A stretch of DNA of 64,000 bases. It comes from Utricularia gibba (Eukaryota > Plantae > Magnoliophyta). Both the position numbers and the translations under genes were made by a program. Below the pieces are notes generated by a model. That model searched no databases, was not told the DNA's origin, and worked only from the letters and a program-made list of their open reading frames with translations. Below, one piece after another: positions 46,193-59,380 of this stretch; within the stretch, counting starts at the first letter, position 1, and each line of letters opens with the position of its first letter. The stretch spans positions 2,232,001 to 2,296,000 of the forward strand of contig NEEC01000007.1 in the NCBI GenBank assembly GCA_002189035.1, read 5' to 3'.

Positions 46193-47607
46193 ATGGGTTT
46201 CGATCTGCACATCGGAGTTCTGGCGTTCCCCTTCGGCACGCACGCGGCTCCTCTGCTCAGCCTCGTGCGCCGCCTAGCCGATGCGCTTCCGCGCGCTCGA
46301 TTTTCCTTCTTCAGTAGCGCCGCTTCCAACGGAGTCGTGGGCGTCCATCGCCAAACGTTTCCGAACATTAGGGGATACGATGTTTGGGACGGAACCCCCG
46401 AGGGATTCGCGGGGAGTCATTTTGAGGCTGTAGGGCTTTTTCTCAAGGCGTCGCCGGGGAATTTCGAGCAAGTTGTTCGGGAGGCTGAAATTGAAGTGGG
46501 TTTACCTGTTAGTTGCTTGATTACTGATTCTTTCTTGTGGTTTTGTGGTGAATTGTCGGAGAGGTTGCAAGTTCCCTGGGTTTCCTTTTGGACCGCAGCT
46601 TCCTGCTCTCTCTCGGCTCATGCCTACACTGATCGACTGATTCAAGCTAAGGGCCTGTTACCAGGTAAAATTAGAACAGAGCTTCCTGAGATCTGGGTGC
46701 TTTTCCGTGTGCTTGAACTGCGTATCTATCTCTTATTTTGCTGCAGAGGAGAAAATTTCATTCATCCCTGGGTTAGAAAACGTCCGTGTGAGTGATGTTC
46801 CTCCTGAAGTTTTTCTAGAAGAGAATCCAACACCTCTGGCTGTCACACTGAACAAGATGTTTGAGAATCTCCCCAAATGCACAGCTCTGGTCGTTAACTC
46901 CTTCGAAGAGATCGACCCAAGGATCACTACCGACCTTCAGGCGAAGTTCCAACATTTCCTCAACGTTGGCCCCTCCCTTTTAGCCTCGTCTGCCACGGCG
47001 GCCGCCCCAGGTGACAAGTCAGGCTGCCTAGAATGGCTGGACAAGCAAACAACAACACGATCAGTTGTGTACGTCAGCTTTGGGACCGTGATTGTGCCCC
47101 CTTAAACGAACTCCTGGCCCTGGCTGATGCTCTTGAAGACTTCGGAGCTCCATTCCTGTGGTCACTGAAACCGGAAGCCCAGAAATCCCTTCCCGAGGGG
47201 TTCCTGGAGCGCACAAGCGGAACAGGAAAGATTGTCCCTTGGGCACCCCAGCCCCAAGTCCTTGCACACAAGAGCGTAGGTGTTTTCATCACACACTGCG
47301 GGTGGAACTCGATCCTGGAAAGCATTTGCAGCGGCGTGCCGTTGATATGCAGGCCCTTCTTCGGTGATCAGAAGCTGAACGGGAGAATGGTGCACGAGTC
47401 ATGGAAGATTGGTGTCAAAGTTGAAGATGGAGTTTTCACCAAGAGCAGCACAACGGAAGCTCTGGTTTTGTTGATGAAGAGTGAAGCCGGGAGCAAATGA
47501 GAGAAAACGTTGGCAGCTTGAAGGAGAAGGCAGTGAAGGCAATGGCGCCTGAGGGGAGCTCCATCAAGAATTTCCAACAGCTGCTCAAAATAGTGGGAAA
47601 ACAATGA
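46193..47607 (+). CDS. UGT78-family flavonoid/anthocyanidin 3-O-glycosyltransferase, copy 1; 2 exons, two 1-nt homopolymer frameshifts (47097-47101, 47489-47491)
   Basis: [15 protein letters not shown] (catalytic His), ITDSFLWF (Asp), PSPG box [44 protein letters not shown]. Frameshifts are defined by comparison with copy 2. Confidence 0.88.
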
Positions 47608-48300
47608 CAATGGTACTAAGCTCCTGCTCCCTGTTACCACCTCTCCATTTTTAGTCAAATAATTTACAAAAAAAAATCAAAATAATCATATACTTATATA
47701 TTATATTTATTAAATAATCATATTATTTATATACGCAATGTATTTCTTAAATTAAAAATAACTCATTATATTCATAATTATACAATGAGTAATAATATAA
47801 GAGTATATTTTCTATGTATGCAAAGAATAATAATATAAGCATATAATTGTAATAACAATTTTTAGTAATATGTATAGTAATTGATTATAGATTAATAATT
47901 AAACACAAAAAAAGCTTATATTGAAGTTAATTTATTCTATAAATTTTTTTTAAATGAACATTGTAGAATATTAAAAAAGAATTAATTTTGATAAATAAAT
48001 AACGTATACATGATACATAATTTTAAAAAATATATCTTATGGATAATTTTATATTATAGATATTAATTTATTAATAAATAATAGTAGTTGTAAATGATTA
48101 TAATTCTAAAGTATCTTTCATGCTTTTAAAATAATTCTTAAAAACAAGAATTCGACATACTTTTCAAAATTAGAAGCTATTTGGAATTGCTACTTTTATT
48201 CTTGGGCAGGAGTGGGCGGTACTTTATATTTCATACAATATAACCAATATTTTACACATACGATAGATATTTTTATCAGGAAAATGGGATAGGCTCCTTG

Positions 48301-50780
48301 TTAGGGAGGCGGGACTTCGATTGCAGTTAGAGTCTTCCTCAAAAATTTTCCGGCTGCGGACTTTGGGATTTCATCTCTGAAAAACACCCGCCGGATCCTC
48401 TTGTAAGACGCCACCTGCACAGAACACATAAACAATCCTCAACTGTGAAGCACAGCGCGGTTTCAATCCCTGCGTATTTTCCTTCATTCAGGTACCTGGT
48501 TTGCTACGTACTCCATGATTTCACGGTCTGAAACGGCGGAACCATTTGCCCGAACCACATACGCGATCGGAACTTCTCCTGCCAGCTCGTCCTTGGCACT
48601 ACAAGGAAAACAGAGTCATGTCTTAACTCAATTGGCTTAGCTTTCTGTCTTTTGTAGCAAGAGGTTGGATACGTAACGGGACAACTGCAGCATCGGCGAT
48701 CTCGGATGGGCGAGTAGCAGAGCCTCAAGTTCCGCAGGCGCCACTTGAAACCCTTTCACTTTGATCAACTCCTTCAGTCTGTCGACGATGAAGAGCTCGC
48801 CGTCATCATCCAGATACCCCAAGTCGCCTGTGTGAAACCATCCCCCGAGTCGATGCTTCTCCTGGTTGCCTCCTCGTCATTCAGGTACCCTACAGTGAGT
48901 CCAATTCAGTCATTTTCTTTCAAACAACAAGATAAACAAATGAAGGTGACGCAGGCAGGGGCTACTCGTCACCCCTCCATTGGCTGCTACTACTGATGAC
49001 CACACACATGAGGATGAATGTGATGTGTTTAAATAGAAATACTCTGCGATACCTTCTTCTAGGAGTGGAAGAATATAAATGTTTAGAATTATATGTTTGA
49101 AACGAATAATATTATGCAAGTTATAAATTAATTATAATATTTAATATTTGAACGAAACACGAGTTATACACAGGTGACACTCTAAAGATAAAGAATGTAC
49201 GAATATGTTTAAATATAGAAATTTTGGAAAACATAAATTTATGAGAATTGTATAATTGAAATGAATAATATTATGCAAAGTAATAATGAATCATGACCCT
49301 AAGCTTAATGATATCGCCCCACACTCGGTCATGCCATAACCCTGACCCCCCCTCCAAGTCAAACCCGACCCCCGGTTGCGGGAAACAAGAAACTAAAGTC
49401 AACCCAAATTCCAATTGGACGAAGGCAAATGACAACGTCAAACCAATGCACGTGCACTATAATTCAATCAAGGTCAACTCAAATTCCAATTGGAACAGAA
49501 TTTAGAAAACAAAGTCAAACCAATGCACATGCACTGCATTATTAGAGACCCTCTTTGAAATAATTTAATTTTATGAAAAAATGCGTTTTATTATCAAATA
49601 ATTTTATTCATAATATATACAATCTACTGGAATTAGGTGTTAATGGAAGATTAGAGACATTAATTACCTGCCCGATAGTAGCATTCGGAAGCTTAGGTTG
49701 AACGGAGGCGATGAGGTGGTCGCTGACCGGCGCAGCCCCGATCATGAGACTCCTGACGACGGAGGAGAGGTCGTATCGGGACGTGGCCGGAGTGTTTGCG
49801 ATGTGGAGTAGAACCGGGGCACGAGGGGTGCGATGGTAACTCGATATCGTTGTATCATATCTAGCATTTGATTTATGTCGAACTTGGACATGATCACCAG
49901 CGCAGCACCGGCGCGGAGGTTGCAAAGGAGCAGCGCTGTCAACCCGAACACATGGAACATGGGCAAGAGGCAGAGCGTGACGTCCTCAACTTTGATGTGG
50001 TGATTAGGGTTTTCGCCGTCGACTTGCTGTGCGATCGACGTCACGACGTTCTTGTGGCTGAGAATCACTCCTTTAGGAAGTCCGGTGGTGCCGGAGGAGA
50101 AAAGAAGGGTCGACGTGTCGTCCGGATCTATTGTCACCTGCAGTAAAAAAACAGAATTATCAAACCTGAAACACTGCTCAGTCAATCTTACGGATTTACC
50201 GGTTCAAATCGTGTCTCATCGGAATTCATCAACTGAGATAGATCTGTGAACCCGGCAGAGGGTTCAACGGTGACCGTCTTTGCATGGGAGATGCCTTTGA
50301 CCTGAGGAGAATAAAGGTAATTCTGATATTTTCCACCAGCTTTGAAAATCATTTCAACCTCACCTTCCCCACATACGCTGCGTGTGTAACTATGAGTTTG
50401 GGGTTCGAAATCTTGGCCATCTTCACGATGTCCTCTGCGGTAAGCGCCGGATTCGTGGGTACAGCGACGGCGCCGGCGAAGGAGGTTGCCAGGAAGGTTG
50501 CGGCGAACTCGGGAGAGTTGTGCAAGAGGATGAAGACCGCATCGTTTTTTCTTATACCCAGGTCCTGCAAGCCGGCGGCCAGTCTCCTGGCCATGAGATC
50601 CAGTCCGCCATAGGTCACCACTCGGGAGGTTACCCCGTCGATGAGGGCGGGGCGTGAGTAGTTCTCCCGAAGGTTCTGGAAGCAGTAGGTGTGGACAGGG
50701 AGATGACTCGGAATCGGGATACCAGGAAGCTCCCATCGGAATATGATGTCCTTGCCTTGCCTCACTTCCTCCACTCCCAT
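48301..50780 (-). pseudogene. 4CL-derived acyl-CoA ligase, copy 1; disrupted
   Basis: [11 protein letters not shown] is present, but the GYGMTE exon stops after ...ISLSLG (~49297) and the GEIC-containing remainder is missing. A 14-nt deletion removes the normal stop. Three 1-nt G/C-run deletions also occur. Confidence 0.85.
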
Positions 50781-51599
50781 CCTGCCCAATTTCTTCTCTC
50801 TTCATTTCCCAATATGCATATTAATATCATACGAATGGGGCCATTTTCGCAATTACAAAGACTACAGGGGGCAGAACTTCATTTCAAAAAAACAACTGGG
50901 ACTGAAAGACAAACATTTCATGTAAACCATTAAATCGTATTCAAGGGTTGACAAATTCTGATTTGTTTAACATTAATTATTTTACTTCTTTTCATAGACT
51001 CAACTATATATTATTGGGGGAGTGGGTACCAGTGGAGGGGGACAAGTATGGGTATTCTTTATTCTTTTTCCCCTATTAAATTACTCAATATTAAATCGAA
51101 AAAATTATAATTAATTGTACGGAAGAATCCCAAATATAATATAATATTTTTTTTAATTAAGTTGACATACGTATTAATTGTACTAGTTATTTGTTAATTG
51201 GATGAAGGGTGAAAAGCACATTGTTTTCATTATCTCAGAAAAAGAGTGAAGCACCAAACTAGGTGCGTTGGGCAACGCCCTTTAGTCGATATTAGCTACA
51301 TGTCATCACCATTCCTCTTTTTTTTTTTTTTTTGGAGGTGAGGGTGTCTCAATCAAATATTGAAAATAAAAAAGGGTTGATTATTTTTAACTATAGTTAT
51401 AAAAAAAAATTAAAGAAATGATTCTATAAAAATTTTATAAACCTCACAATTGATTAATTATTCACTCGTATTAATTTAGCCATAAAAAAATTAATTAGTA
51501 ACCTCATATTCATTGATATATATTATAAATCGTACCTTTTCAAATAACTCTATTAAAGAAAATTCAACTTGTCTAAAAATGCCTACAAAACAAAACTAA

Positions 51600-52690
51600 G
51601 TGGAAGTTTTTGCCATTTCCCAGTTTGGAATGAGAAGTTTGATTAATACCTAAAGGTTATTGGTTTTTCAAAGACTTATAGAGATCATAATCTATACTAC
51701 AAGAAAAATAATTTATCAGTTTTCATTTTGAGACTTTATGTAGATGACATTTTGCTCAACTCCAACTATATGGAAGAAATTGATAAAACGAAGAAAAATC
51801 GATGCAAGAATTTGAAATGAGTAATTTGGGTGAAGTTAGTTTCTATGTGAGGTTGGAAATTGAACAAATTCCTAATTAAGTAATGTTTATCTCACATAAA
51901 AAAATACTGTAAAGAATTACTAGAAAGATCTGGTTTATTAAAAGCCAATATTGCCAAAATACCAATGGATTACAAACTTCAACTCACCAAAGATGATAGT
52001 GAAAAGGATGCTGATATAAATATTTATAGAAGCATGATTGGTTATCTAACCACTTATTACATACCAGACCAGATATCTGCTATTCAGTAAATGTTTTATT
52101 CAGTACATGAAAAATCCTGAGCAAACTCACATGATAGCAGCCAAGAGATTATTAAGGTACATAAAATCTACTTTAAAATTTGGAATCTTATATCCTTATG
52201 AAAGTGATATTCACAACTCACATTGAAGGCCTTTTTTTATGCCGATTATGCTATGGCAGAAGATTCAAAAAGTGCATCGGGGTTCATCATTTTCTTGAAC
52301 TAATATCCAATTTCCTGGTATACAAAACAGCAAAATGTGATTACTCAATCAACTGCAGAATTTGAATATATCGCAGCAACTCGAGTAACAAATCCCTATA
52401 TTTGGTTGAGTCAAACTCTCAAAGAACTAAGATTTATATAGATGCATAACATTCCGTTGAACATTGATAATAAGGCAACAATATGGATTGCGAAGGATCC
52501 AACTCATTTTGGGAAGGCAAAACATATTCGTATTAGATACCATGTGATTAGAGATTATGTCAAGAAAGTAGAAATCTCACTGAAGTATATACCTAGATAC
52601 TCTCAAATTGTAGATCCTCTCACGAAATCATTAGGATGAAACCAATTTCTTGGTTTCAGATCCAAATTGTGGATGATATATGGAAAAAGA
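51600..52690 (+). mobile_element. Decayed Ty1/copia retrotransposon fragment (RT-RNase H)
   Basis: Fragmented translations LYVDDIL, EFEMSNLGEV, YRSMIGYL, TRPDI, QNVITQSTAEFEYIA and IDNKATIWIAKDPTHFGKAKHIRIRYH, with many stops and frameshifts. No LTR seen. Confidence 0.88.
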
Positions 52691-54787: not shown

Positions 54788-56199
54788 ATGGGTTTCGATC
54801 AGCACATCGGAGTTCTGGCGTTCCCTTTCGGCACGCACGCGGCTCCTATGCTCAGCCTCGTGCGCCGCCTAGCCGATGCGCTTCCGCGCGCTCGATTTTC
54901 CTTCTTCAGTAGCGCCGCTTCCAACGGAGTCGTGGGCGTCCATCGCCAAACGTTTCCGAACATTAGGGGATACGATGTTTGGGACGGAACCCCGGAGGGG
55001 TTTGCGGGGAGTCATTTTGAGGCTGCGGACCTTTTTGTCGAGGCGTCGCCGGGGAATTACGAGGAAGTTGTTCGGGAGGCTGAAGTTGAAGTGGGTTTGC
55101 CTATTAGTTGTTTGATTGCTGATTCTTTCTTGTGCTTTTGTGGTGAATTGTCGGAGAGGTTGCAAGTTCCCTGGGTTTCCTTTTGGACCGCTGCTTCCTG
55201 CTCTCTCTCGGCTCATGCCTACACTGATCGACTGATTCAAGCTAAGGGGCTGTTACCAGGTAAATCAGAACAGAGCTTCCTGAGATCTGGGTGCTTTTCC
55301 TTGTGCTTGAACTGCGTATCTATTGCTTTGCTGCAGAGGAGAAAATTTCATTCATCCCTGGGTTAGAAAACGTCCGTGTGAGTGATGTTCCTCCTGAAGT
55401 TTTCCTAGAAGAGAATCCAACACCTATGGCTGTCACACTGAACAAGATGTTTGAGAATCTCCCCAAATGCACAGCTCTGGTCGTTAACTCCTTCGAAGAG
55501 ATCGACCCAAGGATCACTACCGACCTTCAGGCGAAGTTCCAACATTTCCTCAACGTTGGCCCCTCCCTTTTAGCCTCCCCTGCCACGGCGGCCGCCCCAG
55601 GTGACAAGTCAGGCTGCCTAGAATGGCTGGACAAGCAAACAACAACACGATCAGTTGTGTACGTCAGCTTTGGGACCGTGATTGTGCCCCCCTTAAACGA
55701 ACTCCTGGCCCTGGCTGATGCTCTTGAAGACTTCGGAGCTCCATTCCTGTGGTCACTGAAACCGGAAGCCCAGAAATCCCTTCCCGAGGGGTTCCTGGAG
55801 CGCACAAGCGGAACAGGAAAGATTGTCCCTTGGGCACCCCAGCCCCAAGTCCTTGCACACAAGAGCGTAGGTGTTTTCATCACACACTGCGGGTGGAACT
55901 CGATCCTGGAAAGCATTTGCAGCGGCGTGCCGTTGATATGCAGGCCCTTCTTCGGTGATCAGAAGCTGAACGGGAGAATGGTGCACGAGTCATGGAAGAT
56001 TGGTGTCAAAGTTGAAGATGGAGTTTTCACCAAGAGCAGCACAACGGAAGCTCTGGTTTTGTTGATGAAGAGTGAAGCCGGGGAGCAAATGAGAGAAAAC
56101 GTTGGCAGCTTGAAGGAGAAGGCAGTGAAGGCAATGGCGCCTGAGGGGAGCTCCATCAAGAATTTCCAACAGCTGCTCAAAATAGTGGGAAAACAATGA
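54788..56199 (+). CDS. UGT78-family flavonoid 3-O-glycosyltransferase, copy 2; intact, 2 exons
   Basis: Same motifs as copy 1 with open frames. The PSPG box ends in GDQ, the Gln usually associated with UDP-glucose use. Confidence 0.93.
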
Positions 56200-56680
56200 C
56201 AATGGTACTAAGCTCCTGCTCCCTGTTACCACCTCTCCATTTTTAGTCAAATAATTTACAAAAAAAAATCAAAATAATCATATACTTATATATTATATTT
56301 ATTAAATAATCATATATTTTATACACACAATAAGAGATCGTATTTCTTAAAATAAAAATAACTAGTTATTTTAGGAATGACTATTGTAGAATATTTAAAA
56401 AATAAGAATTAATTTTGATAAATAAATAACATATACATGTATATTTATATTTTAAAAAGCTATAAATATTAAGATATATTTTATAGATAATTTTATATTA
56501 TAGAAATTAATTTATTTGATAAATAATAGTAGTTGTAAATGGCTATAAATCTAAACTATCTTTCATTTTAAAAAAAAATTCTTAAAATCAAGAATTTGAC
56601 ATACTTTTCAAAATTAGAAGCTGAATCTTTTTATTTCATACATTAACATCAAAATTTTACACATCGGACTTCGATTGCAG

Positions 56681-59380
56681 TTAGAGCTTTGGCCTTAGAG
56701 TCTTCTTCAAAATTTTTCCGGCTGCGGACTTGGGGATTTCATCTCTGAAAAACACCCGCCGGATCCTCTTGTAAGACGCCACCTGCACAGAGCACAAAAA
56801 CAATCCTCAACTGTGAAGCACAGCGGGGTTTCAATCCCTGCGTATTTTCCTTCATTCAGGTACCTGGTTTGCTACGTACTCCATGATTTCACGGTCTGAA
56901 ACGGTGGAACCGTTTGCCCGAACCACATACGCGATCGGAACTTCTCCTGCCAGCTCGTCCTTGGCACTAAAAGGAAAACGGAGTCATTTCTTAATTCAAT
57001 TGGCTTAGCTTTCTGTGTTTTGTAGCAAGAGGTTGGATACGTAACGGGACAACTGCAGCATCGGCGATCTCGGGATGGGCGAGTAGCAGAGCCTCAAGTT
57101 CCGCAGGCGCCACTTGAAACCCTTTCACTTTGATCAACTCCTTCAGTCTGTCGATGATGAAGAGCTCGCCGTCATCATCCAGATACCCCAAGTCGCCTGT
57201 GTGAAACCATCCCCCCGAGTCGATGCTTCTCCTGGTTGCCTCCTCGTCATTCAGGTACCCTACAGTGAGTCCAATTCAGTCATTTTCTTTCAAACAACAA
57301 GATAAACAAATGAAGGTGACGCAGGCAGGGGCTTCTGGGCACCCAGCTTCTATTGATGATTAGATGCAGGTCTAATCACCATATTCTGAGATATGTTTAA
57401 ATAACTAAACTATGCTAATATTGTATGATTTTTTTTTTTACAAAATAGAAAAACGTAAAACAATAAGAATTAGATATTCGTATCAAACAATATCATGTAA
57501 GATTCTTATCTTAATATTTGATATCAAAACCAAATTTGATTTCATTCCAATTATAAGATGAGGTGGCATTCTACTAATATGTTGAATGTCTAAGAGAGAA
57601 AAAATGTAAGAACATGAATTTAGTCACGAAACACTATATTGGTTATAAACGAAATAGAATATATGTTTAAATAGAAATATTTTGAAGAACTTAAACATAT
57701 AAAAATTGGAGTTACAAAACGAATAATATCATATAATATGAGTGTTACTCAAGACACTAGATGTGTTTTGTGCACCTTTCATGACGGAATCACTCTTGAC
57801 GCAAATCTCGCCGACTTGGTGTCGAGGGAGGGAGGCCCCTGAGGAGGGCGCCACGATCTTCAAGCGGAAGTTTCTGATGAGGGTGCCACATGATCCGCTT
57901 TTGAATCGCGAAGGCCTCTTAGCAAACCCTAAGCTTAATGATATCGCCCCACACTCGGTCATGCCATAACCCTGACCCCCCACCAAGTCAAACCCGACCC
58001 CGGTTGCGGGAAACAAGAAACTAAAGTCAACCCAAATTCCAATTGGACGAAGGCAAATGACAACGTCAAACCAATGCACGTGCACTATAATTCAATCAAG
58101 GTCAACTCAAATTCCAATTGGAACAGAATTTAGAAAACAAAGTCAAACCAATGCACATGCACTGCATTATTAAAGACCCTCTTTGAAATAATTTTATTTT
58201 ATGAAAAAATGCGTTTTATTATCAAATAATTTTATTCATAAATTCAGAATCACAAGTTAAATTTTTAATATTTCAAAATATATACAATCTACTAGAATTA
58301 GGTGTTAATGAAAGATTAGAGACATTAATTACCTGCCCGATAGTAGCATTCGGAAGCTTAGGTTGAACGGAGGCGATGAGGTGCTCGCTGACCGGCGCCG
58401 CCCCGATCATGACTCTCCTGACGGAGGAGAGGTCGTATCGGGAAGTCGCCGGAGTGTTTGCGATGTGGAGTAGAACCGGGGGCACGAGGAATGCGATGGT
58501 AACACGATATCGTTGTATCATCTCTAGCATTTGATTTACGTCGAACTTGGACATGATCACCAGCGCAGCACCGGCGCGGAGGTTGCAAAGGAGCAGCGCT
58601 GTCAACCCGAACACATGGAACATGGGCAAGAGGCAGAGCGTGACGTCCTCAACTTTGATGTGGTGATTAGGGTTTTCGCCGTCGACTTGCTGTGCGATCG
58701 ACGTCACGACGTTCTTGTGGCTGAGCATCACTCCTTTAGGAAGTCCGGTGGTGCCGGAGGAGAAAAGAAGGGTCGACGTATCGTCCGGATCTGTTGTCAC
58801 CTGCAGTAAAAAAACAGAAATATCAAACCTGAAAAACTGCCCAGTCAATCTTACAGATTTACCGGTTCAAATCGTGTCTCATCGGAATTCATCATCTGAG
58901 ATATATCTGTGAACCCGGCAGAGGGTTCAACGGTGACCGTCTTTGCATGGGAGATGCCTTTCACCTTCCCCACATATGCTGCGTGGGCAACTATGAGTTT
59001 GGAGTTCGAAATCTTGGCCATCTTCACGATGTCCTCTGATGTCAGCGCCGGATTCGTGGGTACAGCGACGGCGCCGGCGAAGGAGATAGCCAGGAAGGTT
59101 GCGGCGAACTCGGGAGAGTTGCGCAAGAGGATCATGACCGCATCGTTTTTCCGAATACCCAGGTTCTGCAAGCCGGCGGCCAGTCTCCTGGCCATGAGAT
59201 CCAGTCCGCCATAGGTCACCACTCGGGAGGTTGCCCCGTCGATGAGGGCGGGCGTGAGTAGTTCTCCGGAAGGTTCTGGAAGCAGTAGGTGTGGACAGGG
59301 AGATGACTCGGAATAGCGATATCGGGAAGCTCCGATCGGAATATGATGTCCTTGCCCTGCCTCACTTCCGCCACTCCCAT
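56681..59380 (-). CDS. Divergent 4-coumarate:CoA-ligase-derived acyl-activating enzyme, copy 2; 6 exons, one apparent 1-nt deletion at ~59250
   Basis: [18 protein letters not shown] start, [13 protein letters not shown]|[49 protein letters not shown]. The 3' intron positions match true 4CL genes. Confidence 0.88.

What the first reader, a model, noticed from the sequence alone, without database searches (positions are those of the whole stretch)
57772..58800. 4CL-derived ligase with a rebuilt substrate pocket, including a sinapate-type one-residue deletion
Seen: the protein reads [11 protein letters not shown] where 4CLs have FHIYxLNS, MIGAAP for (K/M)[21 protein letters not shown] (one residue shorter than GYGMTEAGPVLAMCLAF) and GEICVKS for the near-invariant GEICIRG. 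Knowledge (recalled): the Tyr/Ser of HIYxLNS (Populus 4CL1 Y236/S240) contact the hydroxycinnamate 4-OH. A single Val/Leu deletion at this loop marks the sinapate-activating At4CL4 and Gm4CL1. Inference: this is a true-4CL-clade enzyme (4CL intron pattern) with a new acyl substrate, such as sinapate, unsubstituted cinnamate, benzoate or a non-phenylpropanoid acid.
Basis: partly seen in the sequence, partly recalled or inferred. Interest (0 to 1): 0.75.

Follow-up and report, generated by a model that had tools for sequence, protein, structure and literature searches.

The report
Divergent 4CL-type ligase gene, probably broken
This plant gene descends from the lignin and flavonoid enzyme 4-coumarate:CoA ligase and really has the unusual substrate-pocket changes described, but as assembled it is cut short by a one-base loss and sits beside a more decayed twin, so it is probably a recently dead gene.

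Summary
All four motifs are present as described, on the minus strand: [33 protein letters not shown] and GEICVKS. The one-residue loop deletion is real. Exon 3 aligns without a gap to the engineered tobacco mutant that lacks Val341. None of 142 reference 4CLs has the short loop.

The gene has six exons (56681-59380) with GT-AG introns and intact catalytic motifs. Its best matches among solved structures are 4CLs, not 4CL-like ligases.

Three things weaken the "new enzyme" reading:
- **Frameshift.** Exon 1 lacks one C of a C-run (59250-59252) compared with a tandem twin. Translation stops after 54 residues.
- **Decay in the pair.** The twin (48.3-50.8 kb) has at least five lesions. dN/dS between the copies is 0.62, and both copies gained similar numbers of replacements at conserved sites.
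- **Changes are protein-wide.** 51 of 216 4CL-invariant positions differ, with no enrichment in the substrate-binding region.

No close relative or transcript-derived protein turned up in the searches that could be run.

Best reading: a lineage-specific, fast-evolving 4CL-derived ligase that worked until recently and is now decaying. It probably had a more hydrophobic, enlarged pocket and a weak peroxisomal PKL tail.

The parts
59264..59380 (-). Exon 1, first piece (ATG at 59378-59380), 39 codons in the starting frame, up to ...CFQNLPE
   Evidence: It resembles the 4CL N-terminus ([10 protein letters not shown]).
59250..59252 (-). Frameshift site: a run of three C where the tandem twin has four (CACGCCCGCCC against CACGCCCCGCCC)
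   Evidence: Copy 1 against copy 2 alignment; sequence read.
59216..59218 (-). Premature TGA reached in the starting frame. The product as assembled is 54 residues.
58863..59261 (-). Exon 1, second piece (133 codons), readable only in the shifted frame
   Evidence: Pfam AMP-binding E = 3e-24; matches At4CL1 and Nt4CL2.
58801..58862 (-). Intron 1, 62 nt, GT-AG
58333..58800 (-). Exon 2 (156 codons): Box [32 protein letters not shown] and MIGAAP
   Evidence: Pfam AMP-binding E = 1e-41; Nt4CL2 E = 2e-57.
58597..58629 (-). [11 protein letters not shown], where 4CLs have PLFHI(Y/F)SLNS. In Nt4CL2 numbering these are Y239F, S240G, N242T and S243A.
58393..58410 (-). MIGAAP, where 4CLs have (K/M)SGAAP. 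This Ser is at least 97% conserved (shown as 1.0) in the 136-protein panel.
57972..58332 (-). Intron 2, 361 nt, GT-AG, at the GQ|GYG junction
   Evidence: A database 4CL model (P0086) reads through an intron at the same position.
57776..57971 (-). Exon 3 (65 codons plus 1 nt)
57924..57971 (-). [16 protein letters not shown] loop, one residue shorter than in 4CLs, with Pro340 replaced by Ala
57792..57812 (-). Box II reads GEICVKS instead of GEICIRG
   Evidence: Arg is kept in 8 of 8 and Gly in 7 of 8 non-4CL outgroups.
57260..57775 (-). Intron 3, 516 nt, GT-AG
57046..57259 (-). Exon 4: hinge and C-domain motifs [26 protein letters not shown]
   Evidence: Populus 4CL1 E = 3e-33, about 80% identical.
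56967..57045 (-). Intron 4, 79 nt, GT-AG
56864..56966 (-). Exon 5
   Evidence: AMP-binding_C, weak.
56783..56863 (-). Intron 5, 81 nt, GT-AG
56681..56782 (-). Exon 6 with the catalytic-lysine motif [11 protein letters not shown]. It ends ...LRPKL then stop (PKL at 56684-56692).
   Evidence: PKL> is an established weak plant PTS1 (PMC9542071).
48328..50780 (-). Copy 1, the tandem twin, a clear pseudogene. It has one-base deletions in exon 2 and twice in exon 4, a 3-nt insertion, loss of most of exon 3 and an altered 3' end. It shares [11 protein letters not shown] and MIGAAP.
54788..56199 (+). UGT78-type glycosyltransferase B, tail to tail with the ligase, apparently intact. It is part of the duplicated unit.
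46193..47500 (+). UGT78-type glycosyltransferase A, partner of copy 1, with two one-base deletions in homopolymers (about 47097 and 47489)

Best explanation
The locus is a six-exon, minus-strand gene derived from plant 4-coumarate:CoA ligase. It evolved several times faster than its relatives. It was then duplicated in tandem, together with a neighbouring UGT78 glycosyltransferase, as a unit of about 8.6 kb.

The upstream copy is dead beyond doubt. The copy in the finding still has every adenylation and thioesterification motif and five GT-AG introns. It has lost one C in exon 1, so translation stops after 54 residues. It is most likely a recently inactivated pseudogene.

Inferred, not shown: before that, the gene encoded a working acyl-CoA ligase. 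About one amino-acid change per site accumulated in exon 2 with only one in-frame codon loss found in the loop. That would not happen without selection for an open frame.

That ancestral enzyme would have had:
- a more hydrophobic pocket (Tyr to Phe, and loss of the Ser said to bind the 4-hydroxyl);
- a pocket enlarged at the loop that blocks 3,5-substituted rings (one-residue deletion, Pro to Ala);
- a weak peroxisomal PKL end.

These features point away from 4-coumarate. They point towards unhydroxylated or bulkier acids such as cinnamate.
For: Ancestry:
- Every exon's best solved-structure hits are plant 4CLs.
- Identity is 55-60% to 4CLs against 39-46% to 4CL-like and other ligases.

Frameshift:
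- Two reading frames are needed in exon 1.
- Copy 1 has CCCC where copy 2 has CCC.
- The assembled product is 54 residues.

Decay of the pair:
- Copy 1 has at least five lesions, and its UGT partner has two.
- dN/dS between the copies is 0.62. This does not differ from 1 (p = 0.16) and is far above 0.15 (p = 3e-6).
- About 9 replacements at conserved sites are derived in copy 2 and about 7 in copy 1, by my hand count after dropping alignment artefacts at piece ends (the raw script tally is 10 and 9).

Fast evolution across the whole protein:
- Terminal branches are 0.95-1.67 against medians of 0.08-0.22 in exons 1b, 2 and 3, and 0.21 against 0.075 in exon 4.
- 51 of 216 invariant positions are changed.

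No close relative found:
-. One search shows that an identical protein would have ranked second.

Catalytic motifs and splice sites are intact.

Literature:
- The VF pair occurs in a cinnamate-preferring pine 4CL (PMC12917453).
- Y239F raises the Km for coumarate (preprint 10.1101/2021.07.06.451337).
- PKL> is a weak PTS1.
Against: - The frameshift is a single-base length difference in a homopolymer, the typical residual error of long-read assemblies. No reads could be checked.
- Copy 2's replacements are mostly conservative (I/V, R/K, L/M). Everything except the one base is intact, which also fits a living gene.
- Absence of relatives and transcripts rests on searches limited by query length and by a ceiling of 8000 candidates.
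- The substrate inference rests on residue roles recalled from the literature, not on a model. No joined protein was folded.
Confidence: 0.6

Rival explanations
1. Copy 2 is alive. The missing C is an assembly error or a polymorphism of the sequenced individual. The gene encodes a working, divergent 4CL-derived ligase with a changed acyl preference, and is possibly peroxisomal.
For: - There is only one lesion, and it lies in a C-run.
- All five introns are GT-AG, and Box I, GYGMTE, TGD, the hinge and the catalytic lysine are intact.
- Copy 2's derived changes are conservative, whereas copy 1 has S to W, D to G, M to F and I to F.
- All six one-base indels in the duplicated units are homopolymer deletions.
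Against: - Other genes in the window show long unbroken frames of 437-675 codons, so indel errors are not frequent.
- The six one-base deletions split five in unit A to one in unit B. That looks like real decay rather than uniform error.
- dN/dS is 0.62, and copy 2 has as many derived replacements as the dead twin.
- No identical or near-identical protein exists in a collection where other genes of this genome were reportedly found as transcripts.
Confidence: 0.22
2. There was never a new function. A redundant 4CL duplicate drifted for a long time under weak constraint. The pocket changes are part of that drift, and many are reversions to the generic ligase state. The gene is now dying.
For: - Changes are spread over all exons and are not enriched in the substrate-binding region (Fisher p = 0.20).
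- 27 of the 51 deviations match residues seen in non-4CL ligases, including FHVFGL.
- Residues conserved even outside 4CLs are hit, namely Box II Arg and Gly, and Pro340.
Against: - About one change per site with only a single in-frame codon loss found, and no stop until the recent frameshift, argues for long selection on an open frame.
- Substitutions are mostly conservative.
- Catalytic residues are untouched.
Confidence: 0.15

Closest known systems
Sinapate-activating 4CLs (Arabidopsis At4CL4, soybean Gm4CL1) and the engineered Nt4CL2 Val341-deletion mutant (PDB 5BSW)
   Same: A one-residue deletion in the GPVL loop after GYGMTE. Exon 3 aligns without a gap to 5BSW. The link between the deletion and sinapate use is described in preprint 10.1101/2021.07.06.451337.
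   Different: Those enzymes keep the rest of the pocket and GEICIRG. This gene also has Y to F, S to G, N to T, S to A, S to I and P to A, and a GEICVKS box. No kinship with them was shown, and the gene is frameshifted.
Scots pine Ps4CL2, a 4CL with high affinity for cinnamate
   Same: FH-VF instead of FH-IY at the ring-stacking position (PMC12917453).
   Different: In pine the VF pair alone did not explain the preference. Ps4CL2 is otherwise a normal 4CL, without the loop deletion or the Box II change.
[quoted passage not shown]
   Same: They are the best matches for every exon, share Box I and QQVDGENPN, and share the GQ|GYG intron position.
   Different: 51 of 216 family-invariant positions are changed. 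The branch is 3-10 times longer than the panel median. Class placement is unresolved, with weak hints of class I in exons 1b, 2 and 4.
Peroxisomal 4CL-like ligases (OPCL1, cinnamate:CoA ligase CNL, class III 4CL)
   Same: An FHVFGL-type motif and a C-terminal PTS1-type tripeptide.
   Different: Identity to representatives of those groups is only 39-46% in exon 2, against 55-60% to 4CLs. The resemblance is convergence or reversion, not membership.
Tandemly duplicated, unprocessed pseudogenes
   Same: A frameshift, a more decayed twin, and dN/dS near 1.
   Different: This copy has a single lesion, which could still be an assembly error.

Membership tests
Bona fide 4-coumarate:CoA ligase (class I/II) | Box I AMP-binding motif [11 protein letters not shown] | tested here: met
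   Present in exon 2; Pfam AMP-binding E = 1e-41.
Bona fide 4-coumarate:CoA ligase (class I/II) | Box II GEICIRG | tested here: not met
   Reads GEICVKS. Arg and Gly are at least 97% conserved (shown as 1.0) in the 136-protein 4CL panel, which was itself selected on this Box II motif. They are also kept in 8 of 8 and 7 of 8 non-4CL outgroups.
Bona fide 4-coumarate:CoA ligase (class I/II) | Closer to characterised 4CLs than to any other adenylate-forming ligase | tested here: met
   The top solved-structure hits for exons 1b, 2, 3 and 4 are Nt4CL2, Populus 4CL1 and At4CL1.
Bona fide 4-coumarate:CoA ligase (class I/II) | Conserved hydroxycinnamate pocket residues (Nt4CL2 Tyr239, Ser243, Pro340-Val341) | tested here: not met
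   These are Phe, Ala, Ala and a one-residue deletion. The roles of these residues are taken from the literature and from memory.
Bona fide 4-coumarate:CoA ligase (class I/II) | Falls inside the class I or class II clade | tested here: inconclusive
   Per-exon trees place it outside the class II clade (support 98). It sits unresolved at the base on a very long branch that is pulled towards the outgroups. Few class I sequences were available.
Bona fide 4-coumarate:CoA ligase (class I/II) | Intact open reading frame | tested here: not met
   A one-base deletion in exon 1 brings a stop after 54 codons.
Bona fide 4-coumarate:CoA ligase (class I/II) | 4-coumarate:CoA ligase activity | not testable with these tools
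   Needs a recombinant assay.
Sinapate-activating 4CL (At4CL4/Gm4CL1 type) | Single-residue deletion in the loop after GYGMTE | tested here: met
   Gap-free alignment to 5BSW and a one-residue gap to the wild-type structures. The loop is 17 residues against 18 in 140 of 142 panel proteins.
Sinapate-activating 4CL (At4CL4/Gm4CL1 type) | Common descent with At4CL4 or Gm4CL1, and sinapate turnover | not tested
   Neither sequence was available as a reference here, and activity needs an assay.
4CL-like acyl-CoA synthetases (OPCL1, CNL, ACOS5, class III) | Sequence nearer to 4CL-like proteins than to 4CLs | tested here: not met
   Identity in exon 2 is 39-46% to the 4CL-like and other ligase representatives (such as P0191 and P0190), against 55-60% to 4CLs.
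4CL-like acyl-CoA synthetases (OPCL1, CNL, ACOS5, class III) | C-terminal PTS1 (for the peroxisomal members) | tested here: met
   The protein ends in PKL after basic residues. PKL> is listed as an established weak plant PTS1 (PMC9542071). Targeting itself was not tested.
Duplicated unprocessed pseudogene | Disabling mutation relative to a close paralogue | tested here: met
   CCC against CCCC at 59250-59252. This is true of the assembly and was not verified in reads.
Duplicated unprocessed pseudogene | Relaxed selective constraint | tested here: met
   dN/dS is 0.62. It is not different from 1 (p = 0.16) and is far above 0.15 (p = 3e-6). About 9 derived replacements fall in copy 2 and about 7 in copy 1 (hand count).
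Duplicated unprocessed pseudogene | No functional transcript | not testable with these tools
No identical protein was found in the protein collection.

The most novel reading that the evidence does not exclude
Copy 2 is, or was until very recently, a working peroxisome-directed ligase that evolved from a cytosolic 4CL in this Lamiales lineage. On this reading the missing C is an assembly error or a private mutation. The enzyme lost the residue that binds the 4-hydroxyl, widened the meta-position loop and gained a PKL end. It would then activate unhydroxylated or bulky acids such as cinnamate. That would make it an independent, convergent route to a cinnamate:CoA-ligase-like enzyme, paired with a UGT78 in a small duplicated module.
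Probability: 0.15. Interest if true: 0.6.

Novelty: new variant of a known kind. Interest (0 to 1): 0.3.

Why it matters
If the gene were alive, it would be a natural experiment in re-tuning 4CL. It combines the sinapate-type loop deletion with loss of the 4-hydroxyl contact, an altered Box II and a peroxisomal tail. That would be useful for understanding and engineering CoA-ligase specificity.

As it stands, it mainly shows how a specialised paralogue is born, duplicated and lost in a compact plant genome. It also warns against reading a rebuilt pocket from two exons without checking the whole gene.

Tried and rejected
- **Membership in a 4CL-like clade with the same FHVFGL motif.** Rejected: identity is only 39-46%.
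- **Rescue of the frameshift by a downstream start or a small intron.** Rejected by reading the sequence. There is no ATG in the second frame before the Met of DLMARR. The one plausible donor-acceptor pair runs straight into TGA (my own reading).
- **Word search with exon 2 alone.** It sees only proteins of 86-273 residues. The best hit was 61% identical.
- **Representatives search.** The best hit was 56% identical. Clusters at 50% identity merge all 4CLs, so this is not informative about close kin.
- **Profile searches with a full-length scaffold plus exon pieces.** The first was not decisive: an identical protein would have scored about 810 bits against a cut-off of 801. The second was better: an identical protein would score about 576 bits and the best generic 4CL 538. 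Nothing was found.
- **Alignment A6, with all columns kept.** It ranked our pieces worse, so it was not used.
- **MAFFT placement of short exon pieces.** They were misplaced in A2 and A4.
- **Exact look-up of ten window ORFs.** None is in the collection.
- **The look-up of encoding contigs.** Closed.
- **Primary papers on the specificity code and on At4CL4.** Not held.
- **The search of earlier findings by sequence.** Blank.

Full report
**What is there**

The finding's coordinates cover exons 2 and 3 of a six-exon gene on the minus strand, spanning 56681-59380. All five introns are GT-AG and measure 62, 361, 516, 79 and 81 nt.

Translated exon by exon, the gene carries the expected motifs:
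- Box [12 protein letters not shown]
- QQVDGENPN
- GYGMTE
- WFHTGD
- [20 protein letters not shown]
- [11 protein letters not shown], the catalytic-lysine motif

Pfam assigns AMP-binding to exon 1b (E = 3e-24), exon 2 (E = 1e-41) and exon 3 (E = 2e-13).

The four motifs are read exactly as described.

Exon 3 aligns without a gap to 5BSW, the 541-residue Nt4CL2 chain. I take 5BSW from memory to be the Val341-deletion mutant. Exon 3 needs a one-residue gap against wild-type Nt4CL2 and Populus 4CL1.

In 142 database 4CLs, the stretch from GYGMTE to KSGSCG is 18 residues in 140, and 19 or 20 in two. Here it is 17.

**It is 4CL-derived, not 4CL-like**

The best solved relatives of every exon are plant 4CLs. 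Exon 2 is 55-60% identical to 4CLs but only 39-46% identical to 4CL-like and other ligases. Many of those carry the same FHVFGL-type motif. The motif is therefore a reversion or convergence, not a sign of membership.

A database 4CL model that reads through an intron at GQ|GYG shows that this intron position is shared.

Exon 1 needs two reading frames. Aligning the two copies showed that copy 2 has CCC at 59250-59252 where copy 1 has CCCC. As assembled, copy 2 encodes 54 residues and then TGA. I found no downstream start or small intron that rescues the frame.

Copy 1 (48328-50780) is clearly dead. It has:
- one-base deletions in exon 2 and twice in exon 4;
- a 3-nt insertion;
- loss of most of exon 3;
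- a 14-nt deletion that removes the PKL end.

The ligase is duplicated together with a UGT78-type glycosyltransferase. The UGT next to copy 1 has two one-base deletions, while the one next to copy 2 looks intact.

**Constraint since the duplication**

Synonymous divergence between the copies is 0.046 and non-synonymous divergence is 0.029, which gives dN/dS of 0.62. This is not distinguishable from 1 (p = 0.16) and is far above a typical 0.15 (p = 3e-6).

I polarised the differences with a panel of 136 4CLs. About 9 replacements at conserved sites are derived in copy 2 and about 7 in copy 1. That is my hand count after dropping alignment artefacts at piece ends; the raw script tally is 10 and 9. 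Copy 2's changes are milder in kind than copy 1's.

**Constraint before the duplication**

Copy 2 differs at 51 of 216 positions that are near-invariant across class I, class II and Ginkgo 4CLs. Panel members deviate at a median of one such position.

The changes occur in every exon. [quoted passage not shown] 27 of the 51 match residues seen in non-4CL ligases.

Per-exon trees give terminal branches of 0.95-1.67 against medians of 0.08-0.22 in exons 1b, 2 and 3. In exon 4 the branch is 0.21 against a median of 0.075. The row falls outside the class II clade (support 98) but is otherwise unresolved and is attracted to the outgroups. Exons 1b, 2 and 4 are nearest to class I sequences.

So much change, with only one in-frame codon loss found and no stop until the recent frameshift, implies long selection for an open frame. 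This is an inference. The pocket changes are real, but they are part of a protein-wide acceleration.

**Relatives**

- The word search with exon 2 reached only fragments, and the best was 61% identical.
- The representatives search reached 56%.
- Two profile searches used a full-length class II scaffold plus exon pieces.

Rebuilding the same profiles locally reproduced the tool's scores. The local rebuild also showed that, in the second search, a protein identical to our pieces would score about 576 bits. That lies between the scaffold (609) and the best generic 4CL (538). Nothing appeared there.

Notes from other agents place the genome in Lamiales, probably the bladderwort Utricularia gibba, and report transcripts for other genes. 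I did not test that.

**How it most likely works or worked**

Shown:
- The catalytic apparatus is intact.
- Tyr239 is Phe, Ser243 is Ala, and the Ser in SGAAP is Ile.
- Pro340 is Ala, the loop is one residue short, and Box II is altered.
- The protein would end in PKL after basic residues.

From the literature:
- Y239F raises the Km for coumarate and is typical of class II (preprint 10.1101/2021.07.06.451337).
- The same VF pair occurs in a cinnamate-preferring pine 4CL, although it does not explain the preference by itself (PMC12917453).
- The Gly339-Leu342 stretch blocks 3,5-substituted acids (PMC13341628).
- PKL> is an established weak PTS1 (PMC9542071).

Inferred: the ancestral enzyme preferred less hydroxylated or bulkier acids than 4-coumarate and may have been peroxisomal.

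**Is the frameshift real?**

All six one-base indels in the two duplicated units are deletions in homopolymers, which is the signature of long-read consensus errors. However, five of them lie in the unit that also has large, unquestionable lesions, and only one lies in this unit. Other genes of the window have unbroken frames of 437-675 codons.

I put the chance of an assembly error at about one in five.

**Verdict**

- Observation: confirmed.
- Interpretation: partly supported.
- Best reading: a lineage-specific, fast-evolving 4CL-derived ligase, recently inactivated.
- Interest: modest unless reads restore the frame.

Noticed in passing
window 46193-50790 and 54788-59380: A UGT78-type glycosyltransferase and the ligase lie tail to tail and were duplicated together as a unit of about 8.6 kb. 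In the upstream unit both genes are broken. In the downstream unit the UGT looks intact.
   Followed up: partly
window 50302-50363 (copy 1) against about 58985 (copy 2): Copy 1 has a 62-nt GT-AG stretch inside exon 1 that copy 2 lacks. The junction allows a genomic deletion between GTGA and GTCA, which leaves a synonymous Val codon. That would be a frame-preserving deletion rather than a clean reverse-transcript-type intron loss.
   Followed up: partly
window 56681-56692 and 48300-48330: Copy 2 ends in PKL, a weak plant PTS1, preceded by several basic residues. Copy 1 lacks 14 nt between two CTCTA repeats and so has lost that ending.
   Followed up: partly
window about 59251, 49819, 48800, 48700, 47097 and 47489: All six one-base indels that separate the duplicated units in coding sequence are deletions in C or G runs. 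Five are in the upstream unit and one is in the downstream unit. This is either slippage in decaying DNA or residual long-read error.
   Followed up: partly
window 52442-52639: A short ORF resembling the end of a copia-type retrotransposon polyprotein lies between the two duplicated units.
   Followed up: no
protein P0086 (database 4CL model): This public 4CL gene model reads through an intron at GQ|GYG and is frameshifted afterwards. It is a mis-annotation, but it shows that the intron position is shared with the window's gene.
   Followed up: no
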